Of a stretch of DNA of 64,000 nucleotides, positions 9,596-51,975 are shown in pieces. Below the pieces are notes generated by a model that saw nothing but the letters and a program-made list of their open reading frames with translations, did no database searches and was not told where the DNA came from. This stretch comes from Paragordius varius (Eukaryota; Animalia; Nematomorpha). Position numbers and translations under genes: made by a program. The DNA lies in NCBI GenBank assembly GCA_964247055.1, contig OZ176056.1:7812001-7876000 (forward strand), read 5' to 3'. Within the stretch, counting starts at the first letter, position 1; every line of letters starts with the position of its first letter.

Positions 9596-9780
9596 TTAAT
9601 ATAGGAAGGTTCCAATATGATATTAAAATAACCATATGTAAGCCCGTATGGATGAACAGTTTTAGTTCGGCTGATAGCCTAAAACCAAATTTGCGTATAA
9701 AGCGAAATAATTCTATTACATCTAAATATTTTGATGCAAAATCTAATCTATCTCAAGTTTTTAATGCGTAATAGTTGTAG

Positions 9781-11749
9781 AATTGTTCATTTGGTCTGTA
9801 TTTTGAGGATGGGGTCAGAAAAATTGATTACGTGTTAGTTTATAAACAACCACTCTTTATTTCTGATGAGCACGATGTAAAACGTCAACAAAAGCGCTTT
9901 ATATATGAAAGGAATTTAGAAAAAGAAGGATTACAGATTGAAAAAACTAATCCTAAGGTTGGTCATTCTTATTATATTTTAGGAAAATTCATCGCGATAT
10001 GTCTTTGTCAAAATACATGCCCCTTTCCCCATTTTATGTAAATATGCTCAAATGATGAACATTAAAATGCCGATAAAGGTTTTTATTAACATTTTTTTCT
10101 TTTTCTCACTGATACATAAATTTAAATCAGAGGTTTCCAACCCCCAGTCGTCTGAGATATCATGTGCGGTTGGCGTAAGATTCGGAAACCAAATAAATGA
10201 GATATACACAATTTCAAAATATTCTGATATCTTTGCTAAATTTTTATTTCTTTAAGAATCGATCAGCATTGATATCCAAAAATGGGGGAATTAATAGCAG
10301 TTTTCTTTTTTTAAAATTATTTTACAATGTAGTCTAATAAAATTTATTAAAATTTAGTTTTAATGCGGCCCGCGAAGCTATTTGTGTTGTAGATTCCTGG
10401 CAAAAATCGTATTATATATTTGCTTGCTCAGTTTTTTATTAATTCTTTTTGAAAATTAATTTTTATAACTTATGATTATTTATTTTTTGCAATAATTATA
10501 TCTCCATTTTTTTCAAGCTTTCGAATATTAACTTACTATTTTTAATAAATGGAATTTTTGATATACTGTTTTTATATTTAAACAAATATTTTTTCAATAT
10601 TAATTAGCACTGTTCTTTAAGAAATTAAAACTCAATAGTTTTTAAATATGATGCCACTTTGAAATAAAACGCCTGAATTATTATAAATTTTAAATTAAAA
10701 CTATCAAATTTCACTTTTCAATACTTTTTTTCCTTTTTCTATTAAATTTTATCTTGGAAATTTTTTTTAAAAAAAAGAAGTTGTAAGAATTTATATTTAA
10801 ATTACCAGAATCTTGATATCAAAATTTTTTTTCTTATATATATACCTGAGAGTATAAAAATAAATTATAATATATATATATATATATATACCATTTACAG
10901 TTCAAATTCACCCTTGAACAATTCAAATTCACCTTTAAACAATTGAAATTGACCCTAAAAATAAATTATGTATTTTCGAACTAATATAACTCATTATTAA
11001 TATAAAATATATGTTTATGTTATAGTTTATTATTTTTTCAGTATTATTTTAATTTAAACAAAATTTTATTTTTTAAAATATATAAATATATTGGTAATTT
11101 TTAATCTTAAAAAACATGTTATTTTATTTGAGGGTAAATTTGAATTGTTTAAGGGTGAATTTGAATTGTTTAAGGGTCAATTTGAATTGTTTAAGGGTGA
11201 AATTGAATTGTAAATGGTATATATATATATATATAATATATAATTTATATATATTTTACTTAGGAGGATAGCTTTGAAGTGAATAATAGCACAAACGCCA
11301 TCTCCAATTTTTGCAATAAACATTTCCGAAACCCATTTAAACTGCCCCCGGAATATAAACCGAGGGAAAGACAATTTTTTACATGCCCTTTTAATCTGGA
11401 TTATATTACTAGGTTTTTTTTTCATTATTATAACAACTTTTTATAATTTTGTTTTAAAAATTGAAATATTATAAAATATAAAATTATTCATAAGCAAACC
11501 ATACTTTTTAAACACCTTAATTTATTATTTAACCTATGGTTTTTGGATTCGTAAAATAGGGAATAGCCATGTAAATTGACAACACACTTTATTTATAGTC
11601 GATTATTTGTGATCATATAAAATAAAATACTATATTAGTTTTTTTAACCATTTATGCATTTTAATGTCTATTGTTTTTTTAAAAATCCTATAATTGAATT
11701 AGTCAGCCATAAAGTTTGATAATTTTGGTGTAATTTATATCCTATTTAG

Positions 11750-15400: not shown

Positions 15401-18400
15401 CCAACGAGAATTAGATGTGTAAAATGCCCTTCTTAAAATTTCATAAAAAATTATTATATAACAAAGCTCAGGATATTAATATAATTTTTATTCATATTTT
15501 TAAGTAACATATTTTTTATTATAAAAAATTGTGGTGGTTTTATAAAATAAATTATTAATTGGTTTCAAATATTAATTAAAAAAAGTTTTTTATATAATCA
15601 ATTTTTTTTCCTAAAATTGTCACTATTTAAATATACCATTTACAGTTTAAATCACTATTAAACAATTCAAGTTCACCCTTGAATAATTCAAATTCACCCT
15701 TGAACAATTTAAATTCTCCTTCGAACAATTCAAAACACCCTAAAATAAATTATGTGTTTTTAAGATTATTTTTTTATATTTTTAAAAAAAGAACCTTGTA
15801 TTTAATCAAAATAATAGTGAAAAAATAATAAACTTTGCCATAAAAATATATTTAATTATAATGTTGACTTAAATTTGACCGAAATTTCATAATTTATTTT
15901 TAGGGAGAATTTGAATTGTTCAAGGATAAATTTGAATTGATTTATTTTTAGGGAGAATTTGAATTGTTCAAGGGTGAATTTGAATTGATTTATTCAAGGG
16001 TGAATTTGAATTGTTTAAAGGTGAATTTTTATATTATATCCCTACTAAAATAATAGTTTAGAGTTATGTGATGTGAATGGTGTTGGCAACATTACAATGT
16101 GCCCACTATGTGATGAATTGTGCGATTTTTGGAAACTTTCAGACTCTTGTTTATATACCAAAGTTATCAATTTTCATATACCATTTACAGTTCAATTTCA
16201 TCCTTAAACAATTTAAATTCACCCTTGAACAATTCAAATTCACCCTCAAATAAAATATATGTTTTTTAAGATTAAAAATTACCTATATTTTATATATTTT
16301 TCAACAATAAAAGTTTTGTCTTAATTAAAATAGTGAAAAAATAATAAACTATACCATAAACATATATTTCATATTAATAATGAATTATACTAGTTCGAAA
16401 ACGCATAATTTATTTTTAGGGTGAATTTGAATTGTTCGAAGGTGAATTTGAATTGTTCAAGGGTGAATTTGAATTGTTCGAGAATTTGAATTGTTCAAGG
16501 ATGAATTCGAACTGTAAATGGTATATTTAAAAAAAAATTACTATCTTAATAAATTTTTTTTTAAAATCAAAATTCAGATTTTTTTTAGCATATAAAGCTA
16601 TCTGTAATTTAAAATTTATACAATTTTTAAATAACTTATATGACTATGGCGTTATTTAACATATCAATAAATTTTAATCGTATAATCATTCTTAAAAATA
16701 CTTGGAATCGTATTAAATGGTTAACTTTTTAAAAAAATAACCTATTTTCTTGTTCATCTCAGCTTTATTTAATTTAATTTTACTGATTTTTACCAAACGA
16801 GTAGAATATATATATATTTATATATATATAATTATTTTTGCGAATTTTATAATTTATAAAAATTATTATTTTGTAGTTAACATATCTGTTTGATAACCGT
16901 GCGACTGTAGCCTTCTCCATATTCATGTCTTTTTGGTGTAAGAATTTTAGTTATATTTTAAGGATGAAAATAATTTTTTATGCCCTAAACATTTGTAACA
17001 ATAAAATAAAAAAAACTATAAAATTACTTAATTATATATTTGGATTTTTTTAATCCTATTTGATATGAAAGAAATAAAAATAAAACTATAATATATATCG
17101 GCCGAATTTTATTTTATAAGAGAATGGTATAATAATGATTATTATATAATATATTTTGGTTTTTTGAAATTAATTAACTTGTTTTTCTAAATTTTATATA
17201 AATTAATTTATGAATAAAAAAGTTTGAAAAATATTTTATGGTTCATTTTAATATTGATAATAACCATTTACACTTCTAATTCACCCTTTTTCAATTAAAT
17301 ACCCTAAAAATAATATATGTGTTTTTAGCGGCTAATCTAGCTCATTATTAATATGAAATATTCTTTATGGCATAGTTTATCATTTTTTTCAGACTTATGT
17401 TATGTTAAACAAAATTTCATGCCTTAAAAATATTGAAAAACATATATAGCTAATTTTTAATTTTCAAAAACCTAATAATTTATATTTAGGATTTTTTAAT
17501 TTAGAATTTTGGCGTAAATGTGGCATATTACCTATATGTGGTTTATCATTTTTGATTTAACCTTAAAATATTGGAAAAAGTGAAGTGCATTAGGATTAAC
17601 ACAAAATTAATAACTTACAAGCGCATTGCCTTATTTTAATAAGCTTTCATTCTAATAACCAACTAAACAAACTTTATTTATGTTATGATAATCATTAAGC
17701 TACCCTATTTTTTGGAGCTTTGGAAACGTAGGCAAAACACATTGGCGTGGGCTTGGGACACGAAAGATTTTGAGGAGGAAGAAATGATACGACCCGAATA
17801 TGAACACATTGTAAAAACTGTACGGCGTAATCCGGTAACTGGTCAATTTGAACCATACCTGCCCCTGATAAGTCGAACACTCCGGGTAATGGGAGCCGGG
17901 ATAGCTGTCTTAACTTTCGTAAGTCATCATAAAAATTTTTAAGGATAAAGTATTGTTGCCTCTTAACATTCTAATAAATCAATCCAAAATTAATTAAGAG
18001 TTTCACGGTTCCGTAGTAAAATATAGGGGCCTCCTTCCTCTGGTGAAAAAAAAAGTATCTAAACTGTTTTCAGTGAGCCCCTTGCTTCTTTTCATAACGC
18101 GTTTTTACAATAAACAGATTATATAATAAATTAATTAGCTCATGCTGATTTTATTATAAACATTGCCGATAATATGTAAATAAGGTCCTATTTTCTAGTC
18201 AAACTCGTTTAGATATGATTTTACCTTGTCTCACAAATTTACACGAACATATGGGATATTCTAAGAAGTCCTCATAGTAAACCAAAAACAATAAAAAATT
18301 AATTATTAAATCACAATATTTTCTCAATACGCATCCGTATTAATTCTATTAATATCTGATAATATGTATATAAATAATCATTCTAACTCGAGAAATATTG

Positions 18401-30494: not shown

Positions 30495-31090
30495 TTAAGT
30501 CAATTTTTTGGCAGTGGCGTTATGTATTATATATTTTAAAATAACGTTTGTTTATGATAATTGAAACTATATACGGTTTGCATATATAAAAATAATAATA
30601 AATGATAATTAATTTAGAGAACATATAAGGGTATATAAATTTAACGGCCTTAAGATAACCCTCATCTGAAAAATAAATCTTTAATTATATTGATATAATT
30701 TCCAAATCATTATTAAACAAAAATATTTTATAGCAAATGATATATATTTTTAAGTATTATATTTATTTTTTTTTCAAATTTTTTGCCTACCGTAAAAATT
30801 GTTATTTTTTTATAGGGCAGTTGCTATAAAAAATAACATTTTTTAGTTGTAAAGCTCTAAACCAAAGTCAACACGAGAATCCCGAGATATTTATGCATCA
30901 GATATAAGTTTGATTACGCTAATTTTAACGCCCCGATCTTGTGCCCAGGGAATATAATCACGCAAACCGGACGCCGAATAACGGATGTCAATATACTATT
31001 GATTATATAACATTTTTGCTAAAAATTCGGCAGTTTATTATTTTATGCATCCTCGGTAGTATTAAACATGTGCTTTAGAAATCTTTTCAG

Positions 31091-32013
31091 ATGATTCAAT
31101 GTTCTGTGTGCTTAGATAAAATTGTTCGGAAGCCCGCGGCCCTTAAATGTATAATTTTATTTAAATTTTAGGTGGTCATATATTCCACATCGATTGGTAA
31201 TAATTATAAATTTAGTCATAGCATTTCAAATGTGAAGTCACTTTGTCCTATGTGCAGGTGTAATTTTAAGAACGAGGAAATATATGTTTTACACGTTGAT
31301 TATGCTAGTGAAGTATAATGACATAATATTTTTATAGAATCCAGAAACAGATTTAAAGCACAAGGCTTTAAGTTGAATATATAGCTTATATTTAGAAAAA
31401 GAAAATGAATTATTGAATGTAAAATATAAACACTTACTTAAGGAATTGACCAATTGCAAAAGCGAATTGAACATATTTAAACTCAAAGCGAACCAAAAAG
31501 TAAAACCTTAATTATCAACTTTAGGACACAAAATGTCTCAAAGATTATGAGGAAATAATAAATAATTTATCTGTTGAAAATGCCTTGCAAAAAACTAAAT
31601 GTGAAAAGCTCTCAAAGTATTAAATAGAATTAGTTTCTAGTTTAGTTACAACCCTAGAAAACAGTATTTCAAAATTAAGAAAGCATGAAGAATTAGCGAA
31701 ACCCACTCTAAATTATAACAAGATAAACTCGATTATGACAAAATATAATTCAAAACCGTTTTCTGATTCAAACGTAATTGATTTAGCATTAGATCAAACT
31801 GAATCGCCAAAATTTGGGACTCTGAAGCATAAAAAGACAAACCAAACTCAATATTCTCCCCTCAATTATGTGACAAAAAATAGTGGCCTTAAATCCAAAA
31901 ATAATTTACAAACTAGTGCTAATAGTTCATCACATCACAATCATACAAGAAATAAAAAAATTAAACTTCGGCTCCCGTTTGAAAACGTTTCATCAACATT
32001 TAGATTTGAATAA
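31091..32013 (+). CDS. RING-H2 plus coiled-coil protein (TRAIP/NOPO-like E3 ligase architecture), 7 exons, 258 aa, split by six 23-25 nt introns
   Basis: Exons 31091-31148, 31172-31196, 31222-31312, 31338-31371, 31396-31499, 31525-31616, 31641-32013 (777 nt, open). Translation MIQCSVCLDKIVRKPAALKCGHIFHIDCISNVKSLCPMCRCNFKNEEIYVLHVD... gives a full C3H2C3 RING, followed by heptad-rich KENELLNVKYKHLLKEL...LVTTLENSISKLRK and a basic low-complexity tail. Confidence 0.85.
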
Positions 32014-33130
32014 ATTTTATATTTTTTTAAATATATGAAACCCTATATACGGTTGACTATTAAGCAATAAATATTACCAAATATTTTTTTTTAATATAAA
32101 GGGCGAATATTTATGTGCACCAAATTTAAGCCACCCATATTTCTTTAATGCAAATGTTTATGACAATAGTTAATGTAAACAAGCAATATATTTTTACTCA
32201 TACTGTACCTTATAATAGCAATCTATGTCTTTGGGTTTTATTTAAACTGTAGCCGTGTTTTAAACTTTTTTAATCTGCCGTATATAGATTTAATTAGTAC
32301 ATTTAAAATTACACTATTTTTAATATTATTTTAGAACTCTAGGTATTTATCATATTTTGTTGTTAACAGTTTTTGACCGAGATTCATAGAGGCTTTATGA
32401 AATCAGGAGTCCGGTTTGATGTTTTCTTTCCATGATAATATTGATATCATAATTTATACTCGATGGTTAATTGAGAAGATTTTTTACATAGCACACATAT
32501 ATATGTACAACTTATGATTTTACAGATCACTAAAAACTGTTGCGGTTAGCGAATTTTCATGCCCTAACCAACACCGCGGGCAGGTGGCAATAGCATTTTG
32601 TTAACTAAAGATTTCAAATTTAATTATTTCATGCAGCATATTAGACTGTTTTTGTTTGCCAAAATTTAAAGAAAAATATTGGATATCGCAAACAAAACAT
32701 TTTCATCAAATAATTTAATCTTTTATATATAATGTATTATTCGCTTGTCGATTTAACTGAAATCTTTAACTAATTAATTTTGTTAAAATATTTATTGAGA
32801 TCTGGTAATATATGCTTTTCCGTTGATTATAAGGAGGGTAATATATGGCCCTTTTCATTCTTACCATTTTTGTAATTTATGAGTTTTTCTGTGATGATAT
32901 GAATATTTAATCCCTTCGTTTACTGTAATTATTAAATTGATATTTTAACGCATTTTTGAAAAGGTGTATCAACGGTGTACAATAACTAAATTGATAATTA
33001 CCATTTACACCTCGAAATCACCCTTGAACAATTTAAATTACCCTAAAATAAACTGTCTTTTCTTAATAAAAACAACTGTCCTATATCTAATTACTAAAAA
33101 ATATAAACTATGCCATAAAAATATAATGCC

Positions 33131-33849: not shown

Positions 33850-36800
33850 TTATTTTGGAGTGATTGATAATGGTGACACCATAAGATTAGGCATGAGCAA
33901 AGTAAGTTCCGGGAAATAATTGATACATTTTTGAAGTTCCGTACTGGTCAATAAATTAAAATTTATTTTGGATAAAATTTGTGCCAAACAACCCAATCGG
34001 CTTATATCATACTTGATCCAATCTATTGCCAAAACAAAAATGTTTGATTCATCTCGAGCCTGATTTGATGAGTTTTCTAACATTTCTATCACATTTTGAA
34101 GCGTAGCATCCCTTACCCACATCGAACGGCTAAATGCTAAAGTATGTATAATAATAGTAATAGTAATTTGCAAATCACCACCCACCCAGTATAAGGATAA
34201 AAACAAAAAGGTGTTGACAGCTATTTTGTTATAAAGATGCGTGTCTATATTATACGCACATTTTTTTGTCGCTAAAATTATCCGAACATATAAAATTAAA
34301 GATGTTATTAATTTACACATGTCTATTCCTAATTTCGCAATCTAAAACAATTTCTTTTAAATATATTTTAAATATAATTCTCTTTACATAAATTATCTAT
34401 CCGTATATTTGTTTTTAAGTAAGTTCCTTATATCTAAAAATTTATTGGAACATATAAACTTGGATTTGGTTCCGTTATTGGATTTGTTTGAACAAAGCCA
34501 CATTGCATCATGTTAGTTTGCGCATTTCTGTTGGGTACATATGGTTGAATATTTCGATTTTGTGGATGAACATAGACTGATTCATTAATAATGCTACTTT
34601 TGTTAGCTTTGTTCATTAACTTATTGGTTTGTTGTGCCGATATTTCATATTGCTGTATAAGATGCCCCAAAACAGGAATTCCCAAAAAATTAACACTATT
34701 TTTCCATAACTCAATATCTTCGGGTGATATATCTATTTTTCCGCCAGAATAAATGAACAATAAAATTTTATCGAATATTGCCGTTTTTATTTGTGAGCTC
34801 GATGGTATAAATATTGTGTCTAAGGGTATGTTTTGTTCCATGCCTTCAGTACATTTTTTATCTGTCAGGCTTGATTTTGTGGATTCCAAAGTGGCTGATA
34901 AATCAGATTTCAATGCATTTGGTACTTCCTCTTGAATTAAATGGCTTTTCCTTTGGTTGGCTAACAAGACACTACTCTGTTTATTCGTGGATTGGGGAAA
35001 CGTTGCGAGGAAAGCATTATTCAAATATGTACTGTATGAGCACACTAGAGATTTATGAACCTTGAATGGTATGCCCTGTATCATTATACGGCCATCAAAA
35101 TTGTCTGTGGTTCTGGTCGTATCTAAACTCAAATGTTCCAAATAATGAATATATTTCCAGGGAGAGGGCTGGTTACCTCCTAAAAGCGTAGAGTCGGAAT
35201 GTAAAGTTTTGTTGATAATCTGTGGACCAACTTCCTTTTGTGGAGAATGGGATAAATTAGTGTGGGGACTTTGTGGCTGGGATAGATTTGGGGTGGTGGC
35301 GGTTTTTATACTACTATCTGTTTTCCCCAAAATAAGCTTCTTTTCAATCATAGTAAAATGGCGCAGAAAATAAGGGATCTTAAATTTGACACAGGCATGT
35401 TTACAAGCTTTAATCTCTTGTTCGGTAAATTTGAAGGTTTCTTCATTCACTAAATCTCTGCTATGAAAAGTTGTCATGATTTTAACAATCAATTGTAGCG
35501 TTTGTGGCGAAACTCGAAAGTCATTTGGAATTGGTATTTCTTGAACTGTTGGATTAGAACATATTATGTTGGCAAACAGCTCACTATTATAAAAATGGAT
35601 TGAAGTATATACATAATATATATATATATATATATATATTTAATAAAACTCTCCTGCACAACAAAGATTTTTATGCATTAGCTGGCCCTGTCATGCTTTG
35701 CTTGATGTAGTTTCACCGATAATTATTCATAATAATTTGCAATAAATAGAGGTAATAAAGATTAAAAATAATGAATAACATATTTAATAAGAGGAATTTT
35801 AATTATTCTTATACGGGTTTTTGCATAGGCTCAAATAATGTTACTCGAAATTGACCATATTTAAACTGTCCCTTATTAAAGATAATATTCATCTATCATT
35901 AGAATTATTTGAGAATTTTCGTTTTACGAAATCATGGTTAAAGTGTTCACACAGCTGGGATAAGGGATATAAAAGTAAATCATTTGTTGTCCCTTTAAAT
36001 GAAAGAATGATATTATAGAAATTCCACAGAAATGTGTTTAACTGAACTCTCTATCACTTCTTAGGTTATTTGAAAATTAACTCCAAAACTACGTCTATTT
36101 TGTATCGCGTCTCAGTTTTTAACCGCTAGACCCCTACCCATAGACCTATATGGAAATGGCGCTGAGCTAAATACTTTGCCATATTTGGAATCATCATTGA
36201 TACCATCGTCTCATGGGTTATTCGAAAAAATAACTCAACACTTAATAATCGTTATATGATGGTGTATTTTTAGGGCATAAAGGCCCCCAAATTAACGAAT
36301 AAAAGACGCCTGACCTTTTTTACCTGGTTACGAGTAATATTTCAAGCTTTTAATAAGCTTATATGACTTAATTTATTTTATGTAAATTAGCTCCAAAACA
36401 ACGCAATTTCTATATAGTGGCACAGTTTTTGGCGGGTAGCCCCTAATCCAGGGGCAGGATAAAAATAGCATTGGGCAAAATTTGTGCCTTTATATGGGAA
36501 ATACTGGAATTATCATGGATTCCATATGATTCTATTAGACTCATAGGTTTTGTGAAATTTTGTCTACAGGCATGCTGTATCGATATAGTGACGCAGTTTT
36601 ACGCGGGTAGCCCCCTAACCAGGGGCGAAACAAAAAAACGCTCGATTAAATTATTTGCCTGAATTCGGGTAACTTCTGGAATCATGATTGATTCCATATG
36701 CTTTCCTGGGATTTTCGAATTACATCCAAACCAAAAAGTCATTCTATGGTGGCGCATTTTTTAGGGCAAGGGCTTCATTAAGGAGTAATTTAATAAACAG

Positions 36801-40106: not shown

Positions 40107-43100
40107 ATGAATGGTACAACTTTACAACAGCAACAGCTAAAACAGAAATATCAAAATTTAACGAAACGTTATTCGGGCAAACTTTCACTGTTTTGGTACG
40201 GAATGACACCGTTAAAGGCATTACTTATATTTTGGTGCTTAGCCATGATTATGGGATTATTGTGTCTAATAAAGTATCAAATACAGCTCCTACCCTCACT
40301 CATCTGGAACAATGCGGAGAAGGATGGTTTTGATAAAAATTCTGTAAGGTACCTACCTTCTCCTGCTTCCGAATATCCTTCCCTATCTTCCTGGTACAAT
40401 TATTTGTTTTCAAACTTCAAATCGAATCAAGCTACCACGTATAAATCAGCATTATTACTCAACAAGTAATTTTAGATTGTTATATATATATATATATATA
40501 TGTTGTTTTATGTGCGAAAAAAAACTTTAAAATTTGACTATTACATTAAACCAAACCGACCACCTTCATGTAAGCCATTTAAATAAGGATATTTATCCAC
40601 ATCATACCTTATTTTAAAAAAGATTAAATTTTATCATTTATAATTGACATTCATAATAAATATCATTATAATTGGTTTTTGGTAACAATTGTTTTATTTT
40701 TGGAATTAGGGAATCAGAAAACCCCGAAATATATTTTAATAACAGTTTTTATCATTATAATATATTGCTATTAAATATTTTTTATGGCATAATTGATAAA
40801 CATTTTCTGCATTGTGTCAATTTTAAACAAATTTCTATTTTTAAGCATATTAAAAAATAAAGGTAAGCCTTGATTTCAAAAGAGCATATTTAATTATTGG
40901 GCTGTTGGAAATGTGGAGTGAATTACAAGAGTGTATTTAAAATGTTTAAGGAGAAATTTACGAAATTTGAGGGTGAATTCAAAACGTTCTAGGGTGAATA
41001 TAACATGCCTAAGGGTGAATTTATATTGTTTAACGGTAAATTTGAATTGTTCAAGACTGAATATTAAATTTTCAAGGGTATATTTAAATTGTTCAAGACT
41101 GAATATTAAATTTTCAAGGGTATATTGAAATTGTTCAAGACTGAATTTTAAATTTTCAAGGGTAAATGGTGTATATAATATAATATATATAAACGATAGT
41201 GAATTTGCTAATAACACATTCTCGTTAAACGGTGAGGATCAATCCCTTACTGAGGAAGACATATTGGAATACAATAAATTAAGCGAAACTCCAATCAATA
41301 ACGACTTATGTTGGATGAATCGAGACGAAGTTTTAAAGTTTGGGGCAATCCAAATGGATAATGTAAACCTCATAAATTACATCAAAACTAATTATATGGA
41401 TTTGCCACAAGACCGAACTATGCCATATAATTTGAAAAATCCCGATATTAAATACCAATCTCAAGTCAAACAAGATATTATTGTGGAGCAATTATTAAAA
41501 AGCAAAGTATTTAATAAAAAGATATAGTTTTTTTTTATTATTAAAATCTTTTCATATTGTATTGAGATATAGTAGGCAATTTATGTTTAATTCTTTTAGA
41601 GGTCTGTTTTTTGGTAAATGATATTGATAACATATAGAATTATATAAGAGAGTCCTCATCCAATCGAAATCGATGGCTAATTACAAGATATCAATATTTT
41701 TGTAATATTTTAAATGAATTCGACTAAGATAAAGTCATAAGAATAATTTTTTCACCGTATACTGCATCGTCGAATAGTATCGCTTTTTGGGATCCAATTT
41801 TTTTAATTTTTATGCGCCATTATTTTTTACAAAAATGCCATTTTACATTGTTTTTTAACGGAATCTCCCGTTGTCAAAATGATGGATTTATTATATTAAA
41901 TGTTTAACTTTAAGATAAATGTCACTATTTTCCTGAATTTTTATATATTATATATTAGACCAATGGGTTCTTTATTGAGGCAGGGGCTCAGGATGGAGAA
42001 TACCTGTCGAATACGCTTTATTTCGAACGTTTTTTGAATTGGACGGGTCTTTTGGTGGAACCATCGCCAAAGCACTATGAAATTCTGAAGGGGAAACGCA
42101 GAAAGGCATATCTAACCAATAGTTGTTTAAGCCCGAAACCATATCCCTTACAGGTAAAAGCTTATCTTAAAAACATTATTAAGTAGTTGTTGGAAAAATT
42201 ATAAAATTTTAACATAAATACATATATCAATAACCAATCCCTTATATGTATTGTATCAAGAAAAATTTATCATAATGTTTAAAGTTTGTGTTATAAGGTA
42301 TAAAAAGGCTATAAATTTTTAAATACAGCATTTTTTGTCCTTTCTGTTGTAATATATGGCATTATTAATAATCATTTTCAGTATACATTTTAATGGCTGC
42401 TTATATGACATAGTGTAGGGCAGGGCTTTCTAAAACTATGGGTCGCGTAGCAAAATTATGGGGTCGCGAGTGATGAAAATACAATATAACATAAAATGTT
42501 TTTTAACTTGTAAAGTTTTGTTATAAATAAAGATAACGATCATCGTAGATAAATATATCATAAAATCTTCTGATTCGGAAAGACTGTTTATACCAGCATT
42601 TCTATTCTAAGTATATTCCCTATATTTATAAAAATAGAAAATGCTGGTTTTGTGATCTGTTTACGGAATATTCAAATCCAAATGTCAAAAAATATAATCA
42701 TTAATAAATGCCACGACAAGAGCTTGGCCATTTTTTTGAATTAGGCCCCCATCGGGCCCACCCCGTGTAAAAATAGGGTTTTTTTTAAATCAGTGGTCCA
42801 CAAAAATCGTGCTTTTGAATTTTCCGGAATACGTGTAGGACATTCGATTTTAAATATGATTTTTTACTTTTTCGATTGCGCCGAACATAGTCGGCCTACT
42901 TTTTTAATTTAGGCTCTCTTTTTACTGGTTTCCCCAGTAAGATGCCATTTTTTTGTAAAAAACAAAATAATTTTTTGTCCAAGGTATGAGACCGTTAAAA
43001 TTCAATGAGGATTCCAGGTATTCCCTGTTAAAAGGCAATTTTAGTCTTGCGTTTTATAAATATTGGCTGTTAGGTGAACGACGCTAAAACTGCGCCACTA

Positions 43101-45505: not shown

Positions 45506-48500
45506 CTAACCTTTTTTGACCCCTGAACGAAGGCTTCTACCAGGGTTTAAGCCAGGTGGGAGTTTAACATTAGTAACAATACCATCAACAGTTGCAAATC
45601 CATCCATACTTGTTTGAATTTGATTCTGATTTTTGTGTAATGTGTTAGATGATGCCTTTTTCTTACCTTTATGTTTGGGCGTGTTTGTAGTTTTTTTTCC
45701 ATCAAACTCCATCATCTCACCCATATTTTCCGTAGCATCAGTAAATGTAGATGTAGTATTTCGTAAGGCTTGATAAACTTTAAGAGCATAAGCTCGACAC
45801 TTTTCATGATCTACTATTGGCCTGGGATAATCCACACCCAAAACGAATCCACACTTTTGAGCTATGGCGGGTGGGCATTGCCAAGGTGCGTGAATATACT
45901 TGTCAGGTAATTGTGTGAAAGAAAAAAAAGAATTTTTAGTCTTTACGGATGGTAAATTTCGTTTATTTGTCGTGTGAGCTAGGGTAAGCCATTGCCTTAC
46001 ATATTGCCCGAGAGGGTCAAATTTTGTGCCTTGGAGCACGGGATTAAAAACGCGAAAGTAGGGGGAAGCATCGGCCCCTGTCCCAGCTACCCATTGCCAA
46101 CCCATGGAATTGTTGGCTAGGTCAGCATCTACGAGCGTATCCCAAAACCAAGCGGCACCCGTGCGCCAATCAACGAGTAAATCTTTGGTTAGGAATGAGG
46201 CCGTTATCATACGGACACGATTATGCATGTAACCTTCATACCTATATATATATATATATATATATACCATTTACAGTTCAAATTCACCCTCGAACAATTC
46301 AAATTCACCCTCGAACAATTCAAATTCACCCTTGAACAATTCAAATATACCCTCGAACAATTCAAATTCACCCTTGAACAATTCAAATTCACCCTTATAC
46401 AATTCAAATTCACCCTTAAACAATTCAAATTCACCCTTATACAATTCAAATTCACCCTTAAACAATTCAAATTCACCCTTGAACAATTCAAATTCACCCT
46501 AAAAATAAATTATGTTGTATTTTCGAACTAATACAATTCATTATTAATATGAAATATATGTTTATGTTATAGTTTATTATTTTACAGTATTATTTTAATT
46601 TAAAAAAAAATCTTTATTTTTTAAAAATATATAAAAATATTGGTAATTTTTAATCTTAAAAAAACATATATTTTATTTGAGGGTGAATTTGAATTGTTCG
46701 AGGGTGAATTTGAATTGTTTAAGGGTGAAATTGAATTGTAAATGGTATATATATGAATAAGGAGCATTTAATTGAAGTAAAAAATGAATGAAGAATTAAT
46801 AGGTAGCAAAAAAAATTAGTTTTTTCAAGTCCCACCTCTAATATATATGCCATATACCTTATAAAATAAGGTGTTAGCAATATAAATATATAAAAAAATT
46901 ACGGTAAAGTAAAAAAATGAAGAATTACCAAAAAAATTTCGAATTAAACTCCTATATCCAAAATTTAATTTCTTTTGTTTTTACTTTATTCCATAAAAAA
47001 GATACTACCATGTATCGAAAATTTTGGGTATAGTTCAATTTAATAAATTTTACGAGAATTCAAATTTATATTTAACATTTTTAAAATTATATCGTAACTC
47101 TTGTACCTTCGTTAAAAATTACATTTAAGTAAAAATATAAATTTTTATTAATATATCAAACTAATTAATAGTTAGAGTTGTTCGCAATGAATGTCCATTT
47201 TACCCCTCATAATATCCTAAATAGAATGAAAAAATTACAATAAAAAATTAAAAAAATGAAATTAATATTTGTCAAGACATACATAGTTTAAGTTAACTAT
47301 AGTATATATCCCATAGCTTACAATAAGCTTTTTCTTAAAATAAATAAATATCGTGACTACACACAATGGGAAATTACAGTAAAAAAGTTGGGATAATTAT
47401 TATCAAACCAATTAATAATAGTTTAAGCTATGTATAATATTTCGCCCTTATAATAAGCCCTTTTAATTGGAAATCTATTAGATTAAAAAATGTACTGAAA
47501 TGATAAAGCAAATATTTTTTCAAAGGTAGCTTTATGTCAGTTTTTTAAACGGTGTTTTTTTACTATAATTTGTCTTTATATCTGCCTACAGTTTAATGTT
47601 AAAGCGCCATCTAAGTTATTTTACCACAACTGTTTCATCCCAGCATCGACTATGGGATATCCCGTTTTCCCATACTTCCAAGCCTCAAGTCTTGATTCAT
47701 ACGTATCTTGTTGTTCATTTTTTGTTTTAAGCCCTCCTTGCTCTAACGTATTTTGGGTAGCCCATTGAAATTTATCGAATTCAGGGCGAAAATTTTGTTC
47801 AGGCAGACCAGGGAAATGATATAACAAATAGTATGAGAATTCACGCCACCCCAACTCAGCAATGTACCTAAACATATAAAAAAAGAGTAAAATACTAGGG
47901 TTAAATAAATGGTATCCATCTAACCTTTTTAAAATGAATAAGTACAGAATGAGTAAGTATACCATTTGCGCTTCAAGTTGCTTAAAATTTTCAAATTTTG
48001 ATTTAACCATAATTTTTGCATTTATTTTTTTATTTTATTATTTATAAACCTAATTTTCTTTATTTATTATATATTTAAACAATAAAAAATTTTCTTCAAA
48101 AACCAATTTCCAATTTAACAAAATTTTAAATGTTCAATGAAAAATTGTAAATGATAACCCAGAAAACTTATATATTTTTAATTACGTGTTAAAATCTTAT
48201 AAATATCCAAAATAATTTGAAGAAATTAATTAAGATATACGGTTTCTCAATGATTAAAAGTTGATAATGATTTTAAATTTATGTTAAATAATATAAAATA
48301 GGTTTAAAACGATAAAATAGATGATTGATATACGATTTAATATATAAAAGTTAAAACCAAAAAAGACAAAGGACTAACTTGATATGTTCAAGGACCAACT
48401 TGAAGTGAAGGACCAACTTGAACTGTTCAAGGACACTCTTGAAGTGCAAATGGTATATATATTGCTAAAATTAGTAATTATTTCCAAATAGGATATGCAG

Positions 48501-49981
48501 CTAATAGAATTATTATTGGCTAATAATAGTAAAAAGTGAAAAAAATAAAAAGCCAATAATACTTCCCTCTGCAGCATATGCTATTTGGCAATAATTAATA
48601 AATTCCTAGCAATGTCTACCTACTCATTGTGTATATATAAAAATTATAATTTTTACATAACCTACTATATTTCATATATTGTAATTTCATTATATGAAAG
48701 AGTTGAGTAATTTTTAATAAACGTTTGTTTGCTTGTTAACTATGTAAATAAACACGCCTCATATAACATCCAAAAAAAGTTTTATTAAAAAAATAATTAA
48801 TTCTTTCACTAACTTAGTAATTCTTTCCCCAACAATATATTTAGTTTACCGTAAGCATGGTAAAAATATCAAACGGTTGATTAAAACATTTTTTTCCGCT
48901 ATTTAAATATTAACAATAATAATGAAAAACTTTTTCCATATACTACTGTTTAACGAAAAAAAAAAATTCATATCTTTCAACAAAAAATATAAAATTAAAA
49001 GAATTTACATTGGAAAACTTTAAAACAGATTATGAATTAATGCGTACAACATTCCCACCTTTCTTTCCCACGTATTTTAAGGTGCTTAGCAAACTCACGT
49101 CCAGCAAAAACCGTGTGCCAAATTTGCCAAGGACCTATTTCGCCGAGCGCAAGAGAGGGCGAAAGTCTTGAAGTTCCCACGGGGGAGAATACATTATCAC
49201 GGGCCGTATCATAAGTCAACACTCGATGATTTAGGAAATCGGCCAATCTTTGACGAGCATTTGCTTCTCCGGGTGTCCATGTAGCTCTAAAACCTGAAGC
49301 CCAATCTGGGTGCCTAGGTAACAAGTTAAGATCCGCTAAAGTATCGATAGAAATAAGTTTGGCTAATTCAGTTTGTAGGTGTTTTGAATTATTATTATTG
49401 TCATGTTTAAAAGCGGGACAATCGTAAAGTTTACGCGCAAATGAACTACTTTGTTGTTGTGCTAACAAATGATTCATACAGGCTCGCCAATATGGCGTAA
49501 AAACTTTGAAATAACTCCCATTTTGCGTTTTGATAACATCAGGTTCAATTAACAACGAAGCATTGTAAACTTTGAAATTAATCCCATGAGTAAGGAGTAT
49601 ATTTTTAATTTTCAACTGTTGAGCCTGATAAAATGGTTCAAAAACGTGATTAACATAAACGGTACCAATGTTGAATAAAGCCTTTTGTTTGCATATTACA
49701 TCTAAAATATGGAGTGGATCTCCTTTTTTGATTAACAAACTAACTTTTTGGGAAGAATTGTCTTCCAAACTTGTTTGTAAAGCCTTTAAGCTGTGATGTA
49801 ACCACCATTTCTGCGCAGCACCAATTGGCCAAGGCATTTTAACCGATTCATCTTGGTAGATGTAAAGACAAAACACATTTTGAGATTCCGTAACGGCGTG
49901 CCATAATCCGGGATTATCGAATAATCGTAAATCTTTTCGAAATAAAAATAGGGAATTCGTTTTGCTGGATAATGCTGCCAT
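45506..49981 (-). CDS. phr: CPD photolyase of bacterial class III/class I type with a C-terminal basic extension (3 exons, about 633 aa)
   Basis: Exons 49981-49059, 47867-47625, 46241-45506 (both introns phase 2). Motifs FRKDLRLFDNPGL, GAAQKWWLHHSLKAL, FKVFTPYWR, WTPGEANA, GTSRLSP.LALGEI, ELGWREF, WKYGKTGYPIVDAGMKQLW.EGYMHNRVRMITASFLTK, WFWDTLVDADLANNSMGWQWVAG.GAD..PYFRVFNP, KFDP.G.YVRQW, LPDKYIHAPW. Confidence 0.93.
46267..46745. mobile_element. 21-bp-repeat MITE with an expanded left arm (about 11 units) in photolyase intron 2
   Basis: ta|CCATTTAC...GTAAATGG|ta; explains the spurious ORFs 46207-46497, 46223-46531 and 46271-46486. Confidence 0.85.
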
Positions 49982-50031: not shown

Positions 50032-51975
50032 ATGAATTTTTTGAACCAATTCATCGAGTACGATCAACGCAATGAATGGAACCGACTTTTTGATGAAATT
50101 CAAGAGAAATCAAACTATAATTATAGCGTAAAGATTGCCGAAGCTTCTACTAATCGAGAACGAAATCGTTACACAAATGTCATACCCTATGATCACAATA
50201 GAGTCCGGTTAAATATTACATCTTCTATTTCGTGTCCACAGTTACAAGCTTTAAATACTAACAACATTAGCAACAATGGTAAATTAAATTCAGTAACGCC
50301 ACAAAATAATGTATTGCTCATGAAACGGAACAAAAAATCAAAATGGATTTTTCGTAATAAACATACCAATTTGCTTTCTCGTCGATTTAATAACAATAAT
50401 AATACTGTTAACAAAAATAATGATTTATACTCATGCTCTACGGGTTTATCACGTCCTAACGATTATATCAATGCAAGTTTTTTGCCGCTCAAATTTTGTA
50501 CTTTTGAAGATTCTCCCAAATCACCCAATGCTAATCACAATTACAGTGAAAATTTAATTGAAGGTCAAAGCATAACGACCGATTCGTATATTTTGACCCA
50601 AGGACCATTGGAAAAAACTGTAGCACATTTTTGGCAAATGGTATGGCAATATAAATCATCCATCATAGTTATGCTAAATAAGATTTATGAAGGTAACTCT
50701 GGTAAAATGAAGTGTTTCCCCTACTTTCCTGGATGCTTTGACGATGATTCATGCAAAATGTTTCCGTTCACCACCAATTCTGATGAACAGAATAAGAAAC
50801 CAGATATTTTAGAAATTGATGGATGTAAATTACGCGTTAAACTGCTGGACCGTAAAATATACCCCGATTTTATCATATCTACGTTGGAGATTTTAGATAA
50901 ATCCGCATTAGCTTCGCAAACAAATAGCAGTGCGTGTCGGACCATATTTCATTATCAGTATACGTCATGGCCCGATTTTGGGGTTCCTCGTGATCCCGAT
51001 TCTTTCATACAATTCATGGCAATTGTAAAGAAAAAACAGGCAGATTTGCGCTCTTCACAAATTTTACTCGATAAGGATTCCGAGGGCATCCACATCAGAA
51101 TGAATCTCATTGAAAATAATGGCATTGTCGCTAATTCTCATAAGAATGTGTTATCAAGTACCCATGATCATTTTCAATTCCCTACAGTTGTAACAAAAGA
51201 AACCCCTATAAAACTTTCCAAACATAAGACTACAAAAAAATGTGTACCCACTTCACAAACATTTGATATAAATGATACCATAATTAACAAACCTGGAGGT
51301 AAAATAACAAATAGTAAACTCTCTCCAATCATTATTCACTGTAGTGCTGGTATCGGACGAACTGGTACATTTTGCCTTATAGACTGTGTTCTTCATTTGC
51401 TCAATATTGATATTAGTTTATATGAACGACAAGGAAAAAATTCATTGCGTGAAAATATTGATCATACATTGTTTTACGAAAAAGATACCTCCATTGAATC
51501 ATTATCGCAAAAAAGGAGTGAAAGTTTTACATCAGTAAGCCATGACAATACATATTCCTTAATAGATTACATTATCAAACGACAAAATAACATTGAACGG
51601 CTTAATGATGTGAATATTCCGCTCCTTTTATGCGAAATGCGTAAGTATCGTACAGGTCTTATCCAAACGCCAGATCAATTGCGATTTTGTTACGTTGTTT
51701 TAATACGTATATTGGACTGGTGGATTAGGGAACAAAATCATTCCAACATCGAATATATAGATTCGGAAAGAAATGTATCTTCTGCATTTCCTTGTGACTC
51801 TATCATTAAGGAAAATGACTCATTTTATAAATATAATGATAACTTTCCGTCCTTAACACCAATAACAATTGATACAGAAAACAAAAATAATGTTATTAAA
51901 CTTAATTCGTCAACATATAATCAGAATCGAACTAACACTCCATCCTATAACATTAATATTGAGACTTCTCTATAA
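50032..51975 (+). CDS. PTPN1/2: Non-receptor protein tyrosine phosphatase, PTP1B/TC-PTP (Ptp61F)-like, single coding exon, 647 aa
   Basis: N-terminus resembles PTP1B (FIEYDQRNEWNRLFDEI..NRERNRYTNVIPYDHNRVRL); DYINAS, YILTQGP, HFWQMVW, KCFPYFP, WPDFGVP, IHCSAGIGRTGTF and EMRKYRTGLIQTPDQLRFCY are all intact. Confidence 0.93.
   Translation: MNFLNQFIEYDQRNEWNRLFDEIQEKSNYNYSVKIAEASTNRERNRYTNVIPYDHNRVRLNITSSISCPQLQALNTNNISNNGKLNSVTPQNNVLLMKRNKKSKWIFRNKHTNLLSRRFNNNNNTVNKNNDLYSCSTGLSRPNDYINASFLPLKFCTFEDSPKSPNANHNYSENLIEGQSITTDSYILTQGPLEKTVAHFWQMVWQYKSSIIVMLNKIYEGNSGKMKCFPYFPGCFDDDSCKMFPFTTNSDEQNKKPDILEIDGCKLRVKLLDRKIYPDFIISTLEILDKSALASQTNSSACRTIFHYQYTSWPDFGVPRDPDSFIQFMAIVKKKQADLRSSQILLDKDSEGIHIRMNLIENNGIVANSHKNVLSSTHDHFQFPTVVTKETPIKLSKHKTTKKCVPTSQTFDINDTIINKPGGKITNSKLSPIIIHCSAGIGRTGTFCLIDCVLHLLNIDISLYERQGKNSLRENIDHTLFYEKDTSIESLSQKRSESFTSVSHDNTYSLIDYIIKRQNNIERLNDVNIPLLLCEMRKYRTGLIQTPDQLRFCYVVLIRILDWWIREQNHSNIEYIDSERNVSSAFPCDSIIKENDSFYKYNDNFPSLTPITIDTENKNNVIKLNSSTYNQNRTNTPSYNINIETSL

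What the first reader, a model, noticed from the sequence alone, without database searches (positions are those of the whole stretch)
31091..31641. Six consecutive ultra-short (23-25 nt) spliceosomal introns in one gene
The RING protein only reads through if six tiny GT-AG segments are removed: 31149-31171 (23 nt), 31197-31221 (25 nt; a 19-nt alternative ending at 31215 is also in frame), 31313-31337 (25), 31372-31395 (24), 31500-31524 (25) and 31617-31640 (24). Each is AT-rich and ends in TAG. Removing them clears every stop and frameshift and rebuilds a complete C3H2C3 RING across three exons. Chance is unlikely to do this six times in a narrow size window. Introns this short are known from ciliates (Paramecium), chlorarachniophyte nucleomorphs, microsporidia and dicyemids, mostly compact genomes. 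Here they sit beside kb-scale TE-filled introns, implying a bimodal intron system and a spliceosome able to work far below the usual animal minimum (inference).
Basis: partly seen in the sequence, partly recalled or inferred. Interest (0 to 1): 0.88.

Follow-up and report, generated by a model that had tools for sequence, protein, structure and literature searches.

The report
Six tiny introns in RING gene
A small ubiquitin-ligase (RING) gene of an AT-rich worm genome, probably from a horsehair-worm relative, can only be read if six segments of 23-25 bases are spliced out. Introns this short are published for only two other animal groups, and I could not get RNA evidence that these six are cut.

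Summary
Removing the six GT...AG segments at the stated coordinates gives one 258-codon frame, from ATG 31091 to TAA 32013.

- **RING domain:** the first three exons rebuild a complete RING-H2 domain that passes Pfam's own threshold. Two zinc-binding cysteine codons are made only at the splice joins.
- **Number of introns:** no path with fewer than six short introns (18-40 nt) reads through. In the 23-25 nt range, introns 3-6 are uniquely fixed.
- **Chance:** none of about 1,200 non-coding 551-nt windows of the same DNA can be read through this way.
- **Shared features:** all six end in TAG, five start with GTA, all are very AT-rich, and each carries an in-frame stop if retained.
- **Same class nearby:** a 25-nt intron in the neighbouring anoctamin gene is backed by domain homology. 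That gene and the photolyase gene also have 1.2-1.4 kb introns containing satellite repeats, so intron sizes fall into two classes.

Limits: the available RNA runs do not contain this gene, so neither splicing nor expression is shown. Intron 2 may be 19 nt rather than 25 nt.

This scan has already noted the same intron class many times on other DNA of this genome. Published work lists introns under 30 nt in animals only for Dicyema and myxobolid myxozoans.

The parts
31091..31148 (+). Exon 1 (58 nt). Holds the start codon and RING ligands C4 and C7. Its last base is the first base of the Cys20 codon.
   Evidence: An in-frame TAG lies 5 codons upstream of the ATG.
31149..31171 (+). Intron 1: 23 nt, GTA...TAG, phase 1, inner GC 0.00
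   Evidence: The join makes the Cys20 codon. If retained, it brings a stop inside the intron.
31172..31196 (+). Exon 2: a 25-nt micro-exon encoding the CGHxFHxxC core of the RING domain
31197..31221 (+). Intron 2: 25 nt, GTA...TAG, phase 2. An in-frame 19-nt alternative ends at 31215.
   Evidence: Pfam zf-RING_2 scores 34.3 bits with the 25-nt form and 32.8 with the 19-nt form, so the choice is not settled.
31222..31312 (+). Exon 3 (91 nt), holding the last CPxC ligand pair of the RING domain
31313..31337 (+). Intron 3: 25 nt, GTA...TAG, phase 0
   Evidence: (the only choice in the 20-30 nt range)
31338..31371 (+). Exon 4 (34 nt)
31372..31395 (+). Intron 4: 24 nt (a multiple of 3), GTT...TAG, phase 1, with an in-frame stop if retained
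   Evidence: A 30-nt alternative ends at 31401.
31396..31499 (+). Exon 5 (104 nt), K/E/L-rich and coiled-coil-like
31500..31524 (+). Intron 5: 25 nt, GTA...TAG, phase 0
   Evidence: (the only choice even at 18-40 nt)
31525..31616 (+). Exon 6 (92 nt)
31617..31640 (+). Intron 6: 24 nt (a multiple of 3), GTA...TAG, phase 2, with an in-frame stop if retained
   Evidence: A 33-nt alternative is 31601-31633. The segment is present unchanged in a contig of run X5.
31641..32013 (+). Exon 7 (373 nt), a low-complexity tail without homologs, ending at stop TAA 32011-32013
   Evidence: No homologs in two searches.
32066..32071 (+). AATAAA, a candidate polyadenylation signal 53 nt after the stop
9958..9982 (+). 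Independent 25-nt GT...TAG intron in the anoctamin gene of the same window, used as a control of the same class
   Evidence: The flanking exons match Pfam Anoct_dimer positions 1-50 and 54-80.

Best explanation
Window 31091-32013 (+) is an intact single-copy gene for a 258-residue protein. The protein has an N-terminal RING-H2 ubiquitin-ligase domain, a coiled-coil-like middle and an orphan low-complexity tail.

All six of its introns are ultra-short GT-AG spliceosomal introns of 23-25 nt (intron 2 possibly 19 nt). One internal exon is only 25 nt.

Shown from sequence:
- The boundaries, the frame and the RING reconstitution.
- Each intron is a miniature of a normal one. It has a GTA-type 5' end, and by eye one to three A residues about 5-9 nt before the 3' end, a run of 3-5 T/C, then TAG.
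- Any retained intron brings an in-frame stop within itself.

Inferred:
- The ordinary U2-type spliceosome removes them by intron definition.
- Transcripts with a retained intron would be exposed to nonsense-mediated decay.
- Intron 1, exon 2 and intron 2 together span only 73 nt, so these two introns must be removed one after the other.

The six introns belong to a genome-wide class in this hairworm-related animal. That class sits near gene starts and coexists with kb-long, repeat-containing introns.
For: - **Frame:** splicing gives a 777-nt ORF.
- **Domain:** the spliced N-terminus passes Pfam zf-RING_2 over the whole profile. It aligns to solved RING domains across both joins. The unspliced ORF has no hit.
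- **Paths:** at least six introns are required, and introns 3-6 are unique in the 23-25 nt range.
- **Null:** no non-coding window of the same DNA reads through in this way.
- **Signals:** 6/6 TAG, 5/6 GTA and inner GC 0.115 against exon GC 0.304.
- **Retention:** all six carry an in-frame stop if retained.
- **Real DNA:** the segments are present unchanged in contigs of runs X1-X5, at single-copy depth of about 4-5 in X5.
- **Same class nearby:** the 25-nt anoctamin intron is supported by profile continuity.
- **Gene ends:** an in-frame stop lies just upstream of the ATG, and AATAAA lies 53 nt after the stop.
- **Organism:** the window's tyrosine phosphatase has its only full-length match in Gordionus (32% identity, 87% coverage). 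The window's GC of about 27% is close to the 26.9% published for that hairworm genome.
Against: - There is no RNA evidence. The RNA contig sets X10-X12 of the same species label hold none of the gene.
- No protein like the C-terminal exon exists in a library representing about 15 billion proteins, or in the word-indexed search. The gene is therefore unannotated and not shown to be expressed.
- No ortholog could be found, so conservation of the intron positions is untested.
- Local alternatives exist at slots 2, 3, 4 and 6 once lengths of 18-40 nt are allowed.
- AT-rich sequence with freely chosen GT-AG pairs is permissive. Shuffles reached 392 nt of read-through against 405 observed.
- A crude window-wide scan of open frames flanking candidate introns did not separate GT-AG from control dinucleotide pairs.
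Confidence: 0.82

Rival explanations
1. The gene and the micro-intron class are real, but at least one of the six boundaries differs from the reader's. Examples are intron 2 as 19 nt (31197-31215), intron 4 as 30 nt (31372-31401) or intron 6 as 33 nt (31601-31633), possibly as alternative 3' or 5' sites.
For: All of these are in frame and free of stops. The 19-nt form of intron 2 still passes Pfam zf-RING_2 (32.8 against 34.3 bits). Its 3' end, a run of A then TTT then AG, resembles that of intron 1 (by eye).
Against: The 25-nt form scores slightly higher on several RING profiles.
Confidence: 0.25
2. This is a decaying pseudogene or chance ORF. The stops and frameshifts merely happen to be bracketed by GT and AG in AT-rich DNA.
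For: There is no RNA and no homolog for most of the protein. Shuffled sequence can often be read through for several hundred nt.
Against: - Six disruptions are each cured exactly by a 23-25-nt GT...TAG segment, and no further defect remains.
- Two zinc-ligand codons are created at the joins, and the result passes Pfam's threshold over the full profile.
- Apart from one unconfirmed window at the end of the SET-domain ORF, no window outside the RING and anoctamin genes behaves this way.
- The segments share extra signals.
Confidence: 0.07
3. The segments are removed or skipped by something other than the spliceosome. Candidates are programmed DNA elimination, as with ciliate internal eliminated sequences, or ribosomal bypassing of short inserts.
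For: The size resembles that of ciliate eliminated sequences and mitochondrial bypass elements (my own knowledge, not tested).
Against: - All boundaries are GT...AG, with GTA and TAG extensions typical of splice sites.
- DNA contigs of five runs hold the segments, and no DNA contig shows a join at these places (table 5).
- This is a nuclear animal gene set.
Confidence: 0.02

Closest known systems
Ultra-short introns of Dicyema japonicum and myxobolid myxozoans (PMC13644364, Mol Biol Evol 2026)
   Same: They are GT-AG introns under 30 nt in parasitic animals. The 5' signal is reduced to GTa, a few A residues lie upstream of the 3' AG, and there is little or no polypyrimidine tract. Short introns cluster in multi-intron genes next to other short introns.
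   Different: In those lineages the short class is the bulk of all introns (medians of 22-27 nt). Here, within one window, it coexists with 1.2-1.4 kb repeat-containing introns in the same genes. The 3' end here is TAG in 8 of 8 cases, whereas that paper reports only AG for D. japonicum and non-myxobolid myxozoans. That paper does not mention Nematomorpha.
Flatworm microintrons (Opisthorchis felineus and other flukes and tapeworms; PMC6530080)
   Same: There are two size classes, with a short class beside kb-long introns in a large repeat-rich genome. Microintrons cluster next to each other and sit towards the 5' ends of genes. Default settings of gene finders miss them. Here all six lie within 550 nt of the ATG, and the two in anoctamin lie before its first long intron.
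   Different: The flatworm peak is about 37 nt, above the 30-nt limit. Here the lengths are 23-25 nt.
Tiny introns of ciliates (Paramecium about 25 nt, Stentor 15-16 nt) and of nucleomorphs and microsporidia
   Same: They fall in the same length range. In Paramecium, retained tiny introns usually expose a premature stop (my own knowledge of Jaillon et al. 2008). All six introns here do so as well.
   Different: Those are unicellular eukaryotes or compact genomes. This is an animal gene set read with the standard code (TAA stop and no in-frame TAA or TAG in 258 codons).
RING-H2 E3 ubiquitin ligases (Pfam PF13639 zf-RING_2)
   Same: The protein has the full C3H2C3 ligand set with the usual CGHxFHxxC and CPxCR motifs, and it scores above the curated cutoff.
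   Different: Outside the RING domain the protein has no detectable relatives. The layout of an N-terminal RING followed by a coiled coil reminded me of TRAIP. That is a recollection, and no solved TRAIP chain appeared among the hits.

Membership tests
U2-type GT-AG spliceosomal intron | GT at the 5' end and AG at the 3' end | tested here: met
   All six
U2-type GT-AG spliceosomal intron | Removal restores one open frame and a conserved protein domain | tested here: met
   A 258-codon ORF. Full-length Pfam zf-RING_2 across joins 1 and 2. For introns 3-6 the evidence is frame continuity and uniqueness only.
U2-type GT-AG spliceosomal intron | Branch-point A and pyrimidine run upstream of the 3' splice site | tested here: inconclusive
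   By eye, each has A residues about 5-9 nt before the end, followed by 3-5 T/C. I built no statistical model, and AT-richness makes this weak.
U2-type GT-AG spliceosomal intron | Absent from mature RNA | not testable with these tools
Animal ultra-short intron class (Dicyema, myxobolids) | Length under 30 nt | tested here: met
   23, 25 (or 19), 25, 24, 25 and 24 nt
Animal ultra-short intron class (Dicyema, myxobolids) | 5' splice signal reduced to GTa | tested here: met
   GTA in 5 of 6 against a background of 0.30. Compared with PMC13644364.
Animal ultra-short intron class (Dicyema, myxobolids) | Short introns are the main class of the genome (median under 30 nt) | tested here: not met
   In this window, anoctamin and photolyase have introns of about 1.2 and 1.4 kb beside the micro-introns. 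I could not compute a genome-wide histogram.
Flatworm-type microintron system | Microintrons clustered together, 5'-biased and coexisting with kb-long introns | tested here: met
   Six are adjacent within 550 nt of the ATG. The two in anoctamin precede its first long intron. The sample is small, 8 introns in 2 genes.
Flatworm-type microintron system | Length mode about 37 nt | tested here: not met
   23-25 nt here, against 37 nt in PMC6530080
RING-H2 zinc finger (PF13639) | Eight ligands in C3H2C3 order and a score above Pfam's gathering cutoff | tested here: met
   34.3 bits against 27.3, profile positions 2-44 of 44. Solved RING domains align at E = 1.8e-7.
TRAIP-type E3 ligase | Orthology beyond the RING domain (coiled coil, C-terminal PCNA-binding tail) | not tested
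   The idea comes from memory only. The spliced full-length protein has no reference, so I did not search with it. The tail has no homologs.

The most novel reading that the evidence does not exclude
Hairworm relatives would be a third animal lineage that splices introns under 30 nt, and the first to do so in a large, repeat-rich genome. The tiny introns would form a separate class, clustered in the first ~500 nt of genes, beside kb-long introns in the same genes. Extreme intron shortening would then not be a by-product of genome compaction. It would point to a start-proximal mode of splicing by intron definition. This gene would be its extreme case, with all six introns tiny and a 25-nt exon between two of them.
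Probability: 0.55. Interest if true: 0.8.

Novelty: new variant of a known kind. Interest (0 to 1): 0.6.

Why it matters
- **Limits of splicing:** a 2026 survey of 51 animal genomes found introns under 30 nt only in myxobolid myxozoans and Dicyema, both very reduced parasites. A hairworm-type genome with the same sizes plus kb-long introns would separate intron shrinkage from genome shrinkage. It would also give a system for asking how one spliceosome handles 23-nt and 1,400-nt introns in the same transcript.
- **Annotation:** gene finders with a minimum intron length of 30-40 nt would break or miss genes like this one. That may inflate the reported "loss" of conserved genes in hairworms. This gene has no counterpart in a protein library representing about 15 billion sequences.
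- **Mechanism:** a 25-nt exon flanked by 23- and 25-nt introns is a stringent natural test of the spliceosome's minimum space requirements.

Tried and rejected
- **RNA evidence:** The RNA contig sets X10-X12 gave only spurious 19-26-nt matches.
- **Cross-sample divergence:** contigs of run X5 are identical over the parts of the gene that they cover, so there is no substitution pattern to analyse.
- **Homologs of the last exon:** both the word-indexed search and the full HMMER search found nothing real.
- **Look-ups of encoding contigs:** I tried the window's phosphatase and its Gordionus homolog, hoping to walk by synteny to an orthologous locus. Neither is on record.
- **Shuffle test of read-through length:** too permissive to be useful.
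- **Window-wide scan for open frames flanking GT-AG pairs:** it did not separate GT-AG from control dinucleotide pairs. I replaced it with the stricter read-through test on genomic windows.
- **Rfam and tandem-repeat scans of the region:** nothing found.
- **A possible 25-nt intron at the end of the SET-domain ORF near 1068 (-):** it leads to a stop after 7 codons, so I did not accept it.
- **TRAIP identity:** considered, but left as an untested recollection.
- searching with or folding the full 258-residue spliced protein.

Full report
**What is there.** The window is AT-rich, with GC around 27%. It carries an animal-type gene set: anoctamin, a tyrosine phosphatase, a BTB protein and a SET/MYND protein, plus a photolyase of bacterial type (see "Noticed in passing"). 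At 31091-32013 on the + strand every unspliced frame is broken by stops. The six segments are 31149-31171, 31197-31221, 31313-31337, 31372-31395, 31500-31524 and 31617-31640. Their lengths are 23, 25, 25, 24, 25 and 24 nt. The exons are 58, 25, 91, 34, 104, 92 and 373 nt, and the intron phases are 1, 2, 0, 1, 0 and 2. An in-frame TAG lies five codons upstream of the ATG, and AATAAA lies 53 nt after the stop. There is no tRNA, Rfam family or tandem repeat in the region.

It matches Pfam zf-RING_2 over the whole profile (positions 2-44 of 44) at 34.3 bits, above the curated cutoff of 27.3. It also matches several other RING profiles. A phmmer search against solved structures finds RING domains (8i3x_A, TRIM21, RNF125, HRD1 and others), and the alignments run uninterrupted through both joins. 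The codons of the third and sixth zinc ligands exist only after splicing: T|GT at join 1 and TG|C at join 2. The longest unspliced ORF of the region (31172-31315) hits no family. After the RING comes a K/E/L-rich, coiled-coil-like stretch and then a low-complexity tail. The tail has no relatives in the word-indexed search. A full HMMER pass over 1.84 billion representative proteins gave only one weak hit, to a low-complexity 1355-residue protein.

**Is it more than chance?** AT-rich DNA offers many GT and AG pairs, so I tested this in several ways.
- Dinucleotide shuffles of 31091-31641 could be read through for up to 392 nt, against 405 nt observed. Read-through length alone is therefore weak evidence.
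- A crude window-wide scan for open frames flanking GT..AG pairs did not separate GT-AG from control dinucleotide pairs.
- Exhaustive enumeration is sharper. With GT-AG introns of 18-40 nt, no path from the ATG to the stop uses fewer than six. At 23-25 nt there are just two six-intron paths. Introns 3-6 are identical in both, and the alternative for the first two abolishes the RING.
- An empirical null used 1270 windows of 551 nt from the same DNA, on both strands. Of the 39 that read through with at most six 23-25-nt GT-AG introns, most are long intron-free ORFs. The ones that need introns are this gene, the anoctamin N-terminus and one window at the end of the SET-domain ORF. Requiring TAG at the 3' end changes nothing.
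- The six share features beyond GT-AG. All end in TAG (background 0.31, p about 8e-4). Five begin with GTA (background 0.30, p about 0.01). Inner GC is 0.00-0.19, while only 24% of background segments reach 0.20 or less. Intron GC is 0.178 against exon GC 0.304.
- Each intron, if retained, brings a stop codon inside itself, including the two 24-nt introns whose length is a multiple of three.

**Are the segments real DNA?** Logan contigs of four runs of one species label hold 92-100% of the sampled words of the stretch. A fifth run, from another study and under another organism label, holds 55-66%. When laid on the window, that fifth run's contigs match without a single difference over 30730-31096, 31329-31504, 31537-31795 and 31819-32121. 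They lie at single-copy depth and show no join at any of the six places. Assembly error and DNA-level removal are therefore unlikely.

**RNA.** This is the gap. Three RNA contig sets with the same species label hold none of the gene. They gave only 19-26-nt low-complexity matches, and nothing of the neighbouring BTB gene either. Neither expression nor splicing is shown here. Two earlier notes of this scan (s1-310045 and s1-305267) say that RNA of this species shows 21-26-nt introns cut out exactly in other genes. I could not test that, and I treat it as a lead.

**The class in this window.** The 25-nt GT...TAG segment at 9958-9982 in the anoctamin gene is supported by homology. The exon before it matches Pfam Anoct_dimer positions 1-50, and the exon after it matches positions 54-80. 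A 24-nt segment at 9757-9780 joins two long open stretches just upstream. The next anoctamin intron runs from about 10078 to 11262, roughly 1.2 kb, with GT...AG ends, and contains a satellite repeat. The photolyase gene has an intron of about 1.4 kb of the same kind. All eight tiny introns lie near the 5' ends of their genes. In the RING gene they lie within 550 nt of the ATG, and the last 373 nt are intron-free.

**Organism.** The 647-residue phosphatase has its only near-full-length match in an unnamed protein of Gordionus sp. m RMFG-2023 (32% identity, 87% coverage, E = 5e-69). All other animals align only over the catalytic domain. The Gordionus montsenyensis genome is reported at 26.93% GC and 63.8% repeats, similar to this window. 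The source is therefore most likely a hairworm relative, but not Gordionus itself. One gene is thin evidence, and earlier notes of the scan reached the same view.

**How it most likely works.** From sequence, each segment is a miniature intron. It has a GTA-type 5' site, and by eye A residues about 5-9 nt from the 3' end, a run of 3-5 T/C, and then TAG. I infer removal by the ordinary U2-type spliceosome through intron definition. The published analysis of myxozoan and Dicyema introns found conserved U2 snRNA and U2AF despite 22-27-nt introns. Retention would expose a premature stop, so unspliced transcripts should be subject to nonsense-mediated decay (inference). Intron 1, exon 2 and intron 2 together span 73 nt, which implies that these two introns are removed in sequence (inference). 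Intron 2 is ambiguous. The 25-nt form scores 34.3 bits on zf-RING_2 and the 19-nt form scores 32.8. The 19-nt form has a 3' end more like that of intron 1.

**Comparison with what is known.**
- A September 2026 survey states that introns under 30 nt in animals are known only from myxobolid myxozoans and Dicyema japonicum, with the 5' signal reduced to GTa. It does not mention Nematomorpha.
- The hairworm genome papers I could read do not discuss introns at all. Searches for hairworm genera together with "intron" found nothing relevant.
- Flatworm microintrons already show the two-size-class pattern, clustered and 5'-biased, beside 3-kb introns, but at about 37 nt.
- The present case combines the sub-30-nt size of the first group with the architecture of the second.

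**Verdict.** RNA proof at this locus is missing. The scan has already recorded the same intron class many times elsewhere in this genome. This gene stands out for having six such introns in a row and a 25-nt exon between two of them.

Noticed in passing
window 45506-49981 (-): The photolyase gene's first exon (314 aa) has its best matches, about 40% identity over about 90%, in bacterial deoxyribodipyrimidine photolyases (Paracaedibacteraceae, Legionella, alphaproteobacteria). No animal protein is named among the top 120 hits, about three-quarters of which carry no source name. The gene nevertheless has GT-AG introns of about 1.0 and 1.4 kb. This agrees with another first-reader note of a horizontally acquired, intron-bearing photolyase.
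   Followed up: partly
window 11058-11268, 16077-16250, 40894-41217, 46207-46531, 32986-33041: A short satellite, which translates as repeats of FKFTLEQ or NLNCSRV depending on frame, recurs in several places. These include the long introns of the anoctamin and photolyase genes.
   Followed up: no
window 30730-32121 versus 32799-33049, 34474-34540, 35296-35512: Run X5 comes from another study and carries another organism label. It is identical to the window over about 1.1 kb of the RING gene, but differs by about 2.5-3.7%, with 3-nt indels, in nearby stretches (two at low, single-copy-like depth; 32799-33049 adjoins a high-depth repeat). This suggests a mosaic of shared and diverged haplotypes, or mislabelled or introgressed samples.
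   Followed up: no
window 31084-31093: The start codon is directly preceded by TTTTCAG, which looks like a 3' splice acceptor. It could be the end of a 5'-UTR intron or a trans-splice acceptor.
   Followed up: no
window 9757-9780: A 24-nt GT...TAG segment joins two long open stretches (75 and 86 codons) just upstream of the homology-supported 25-nt anoctamin intron. It is probably a further micro-intron, but the exon before it has no Pfam match.
   Followed up: partly
window 50032-51975 (+): The tyrosine phosphatase gene is a single 647-codon ORF without introns, next to heavily interrupted genes. Its catalytic domain is split by long low-complexity inserts (four Pfam stretches).
   Followed up: no
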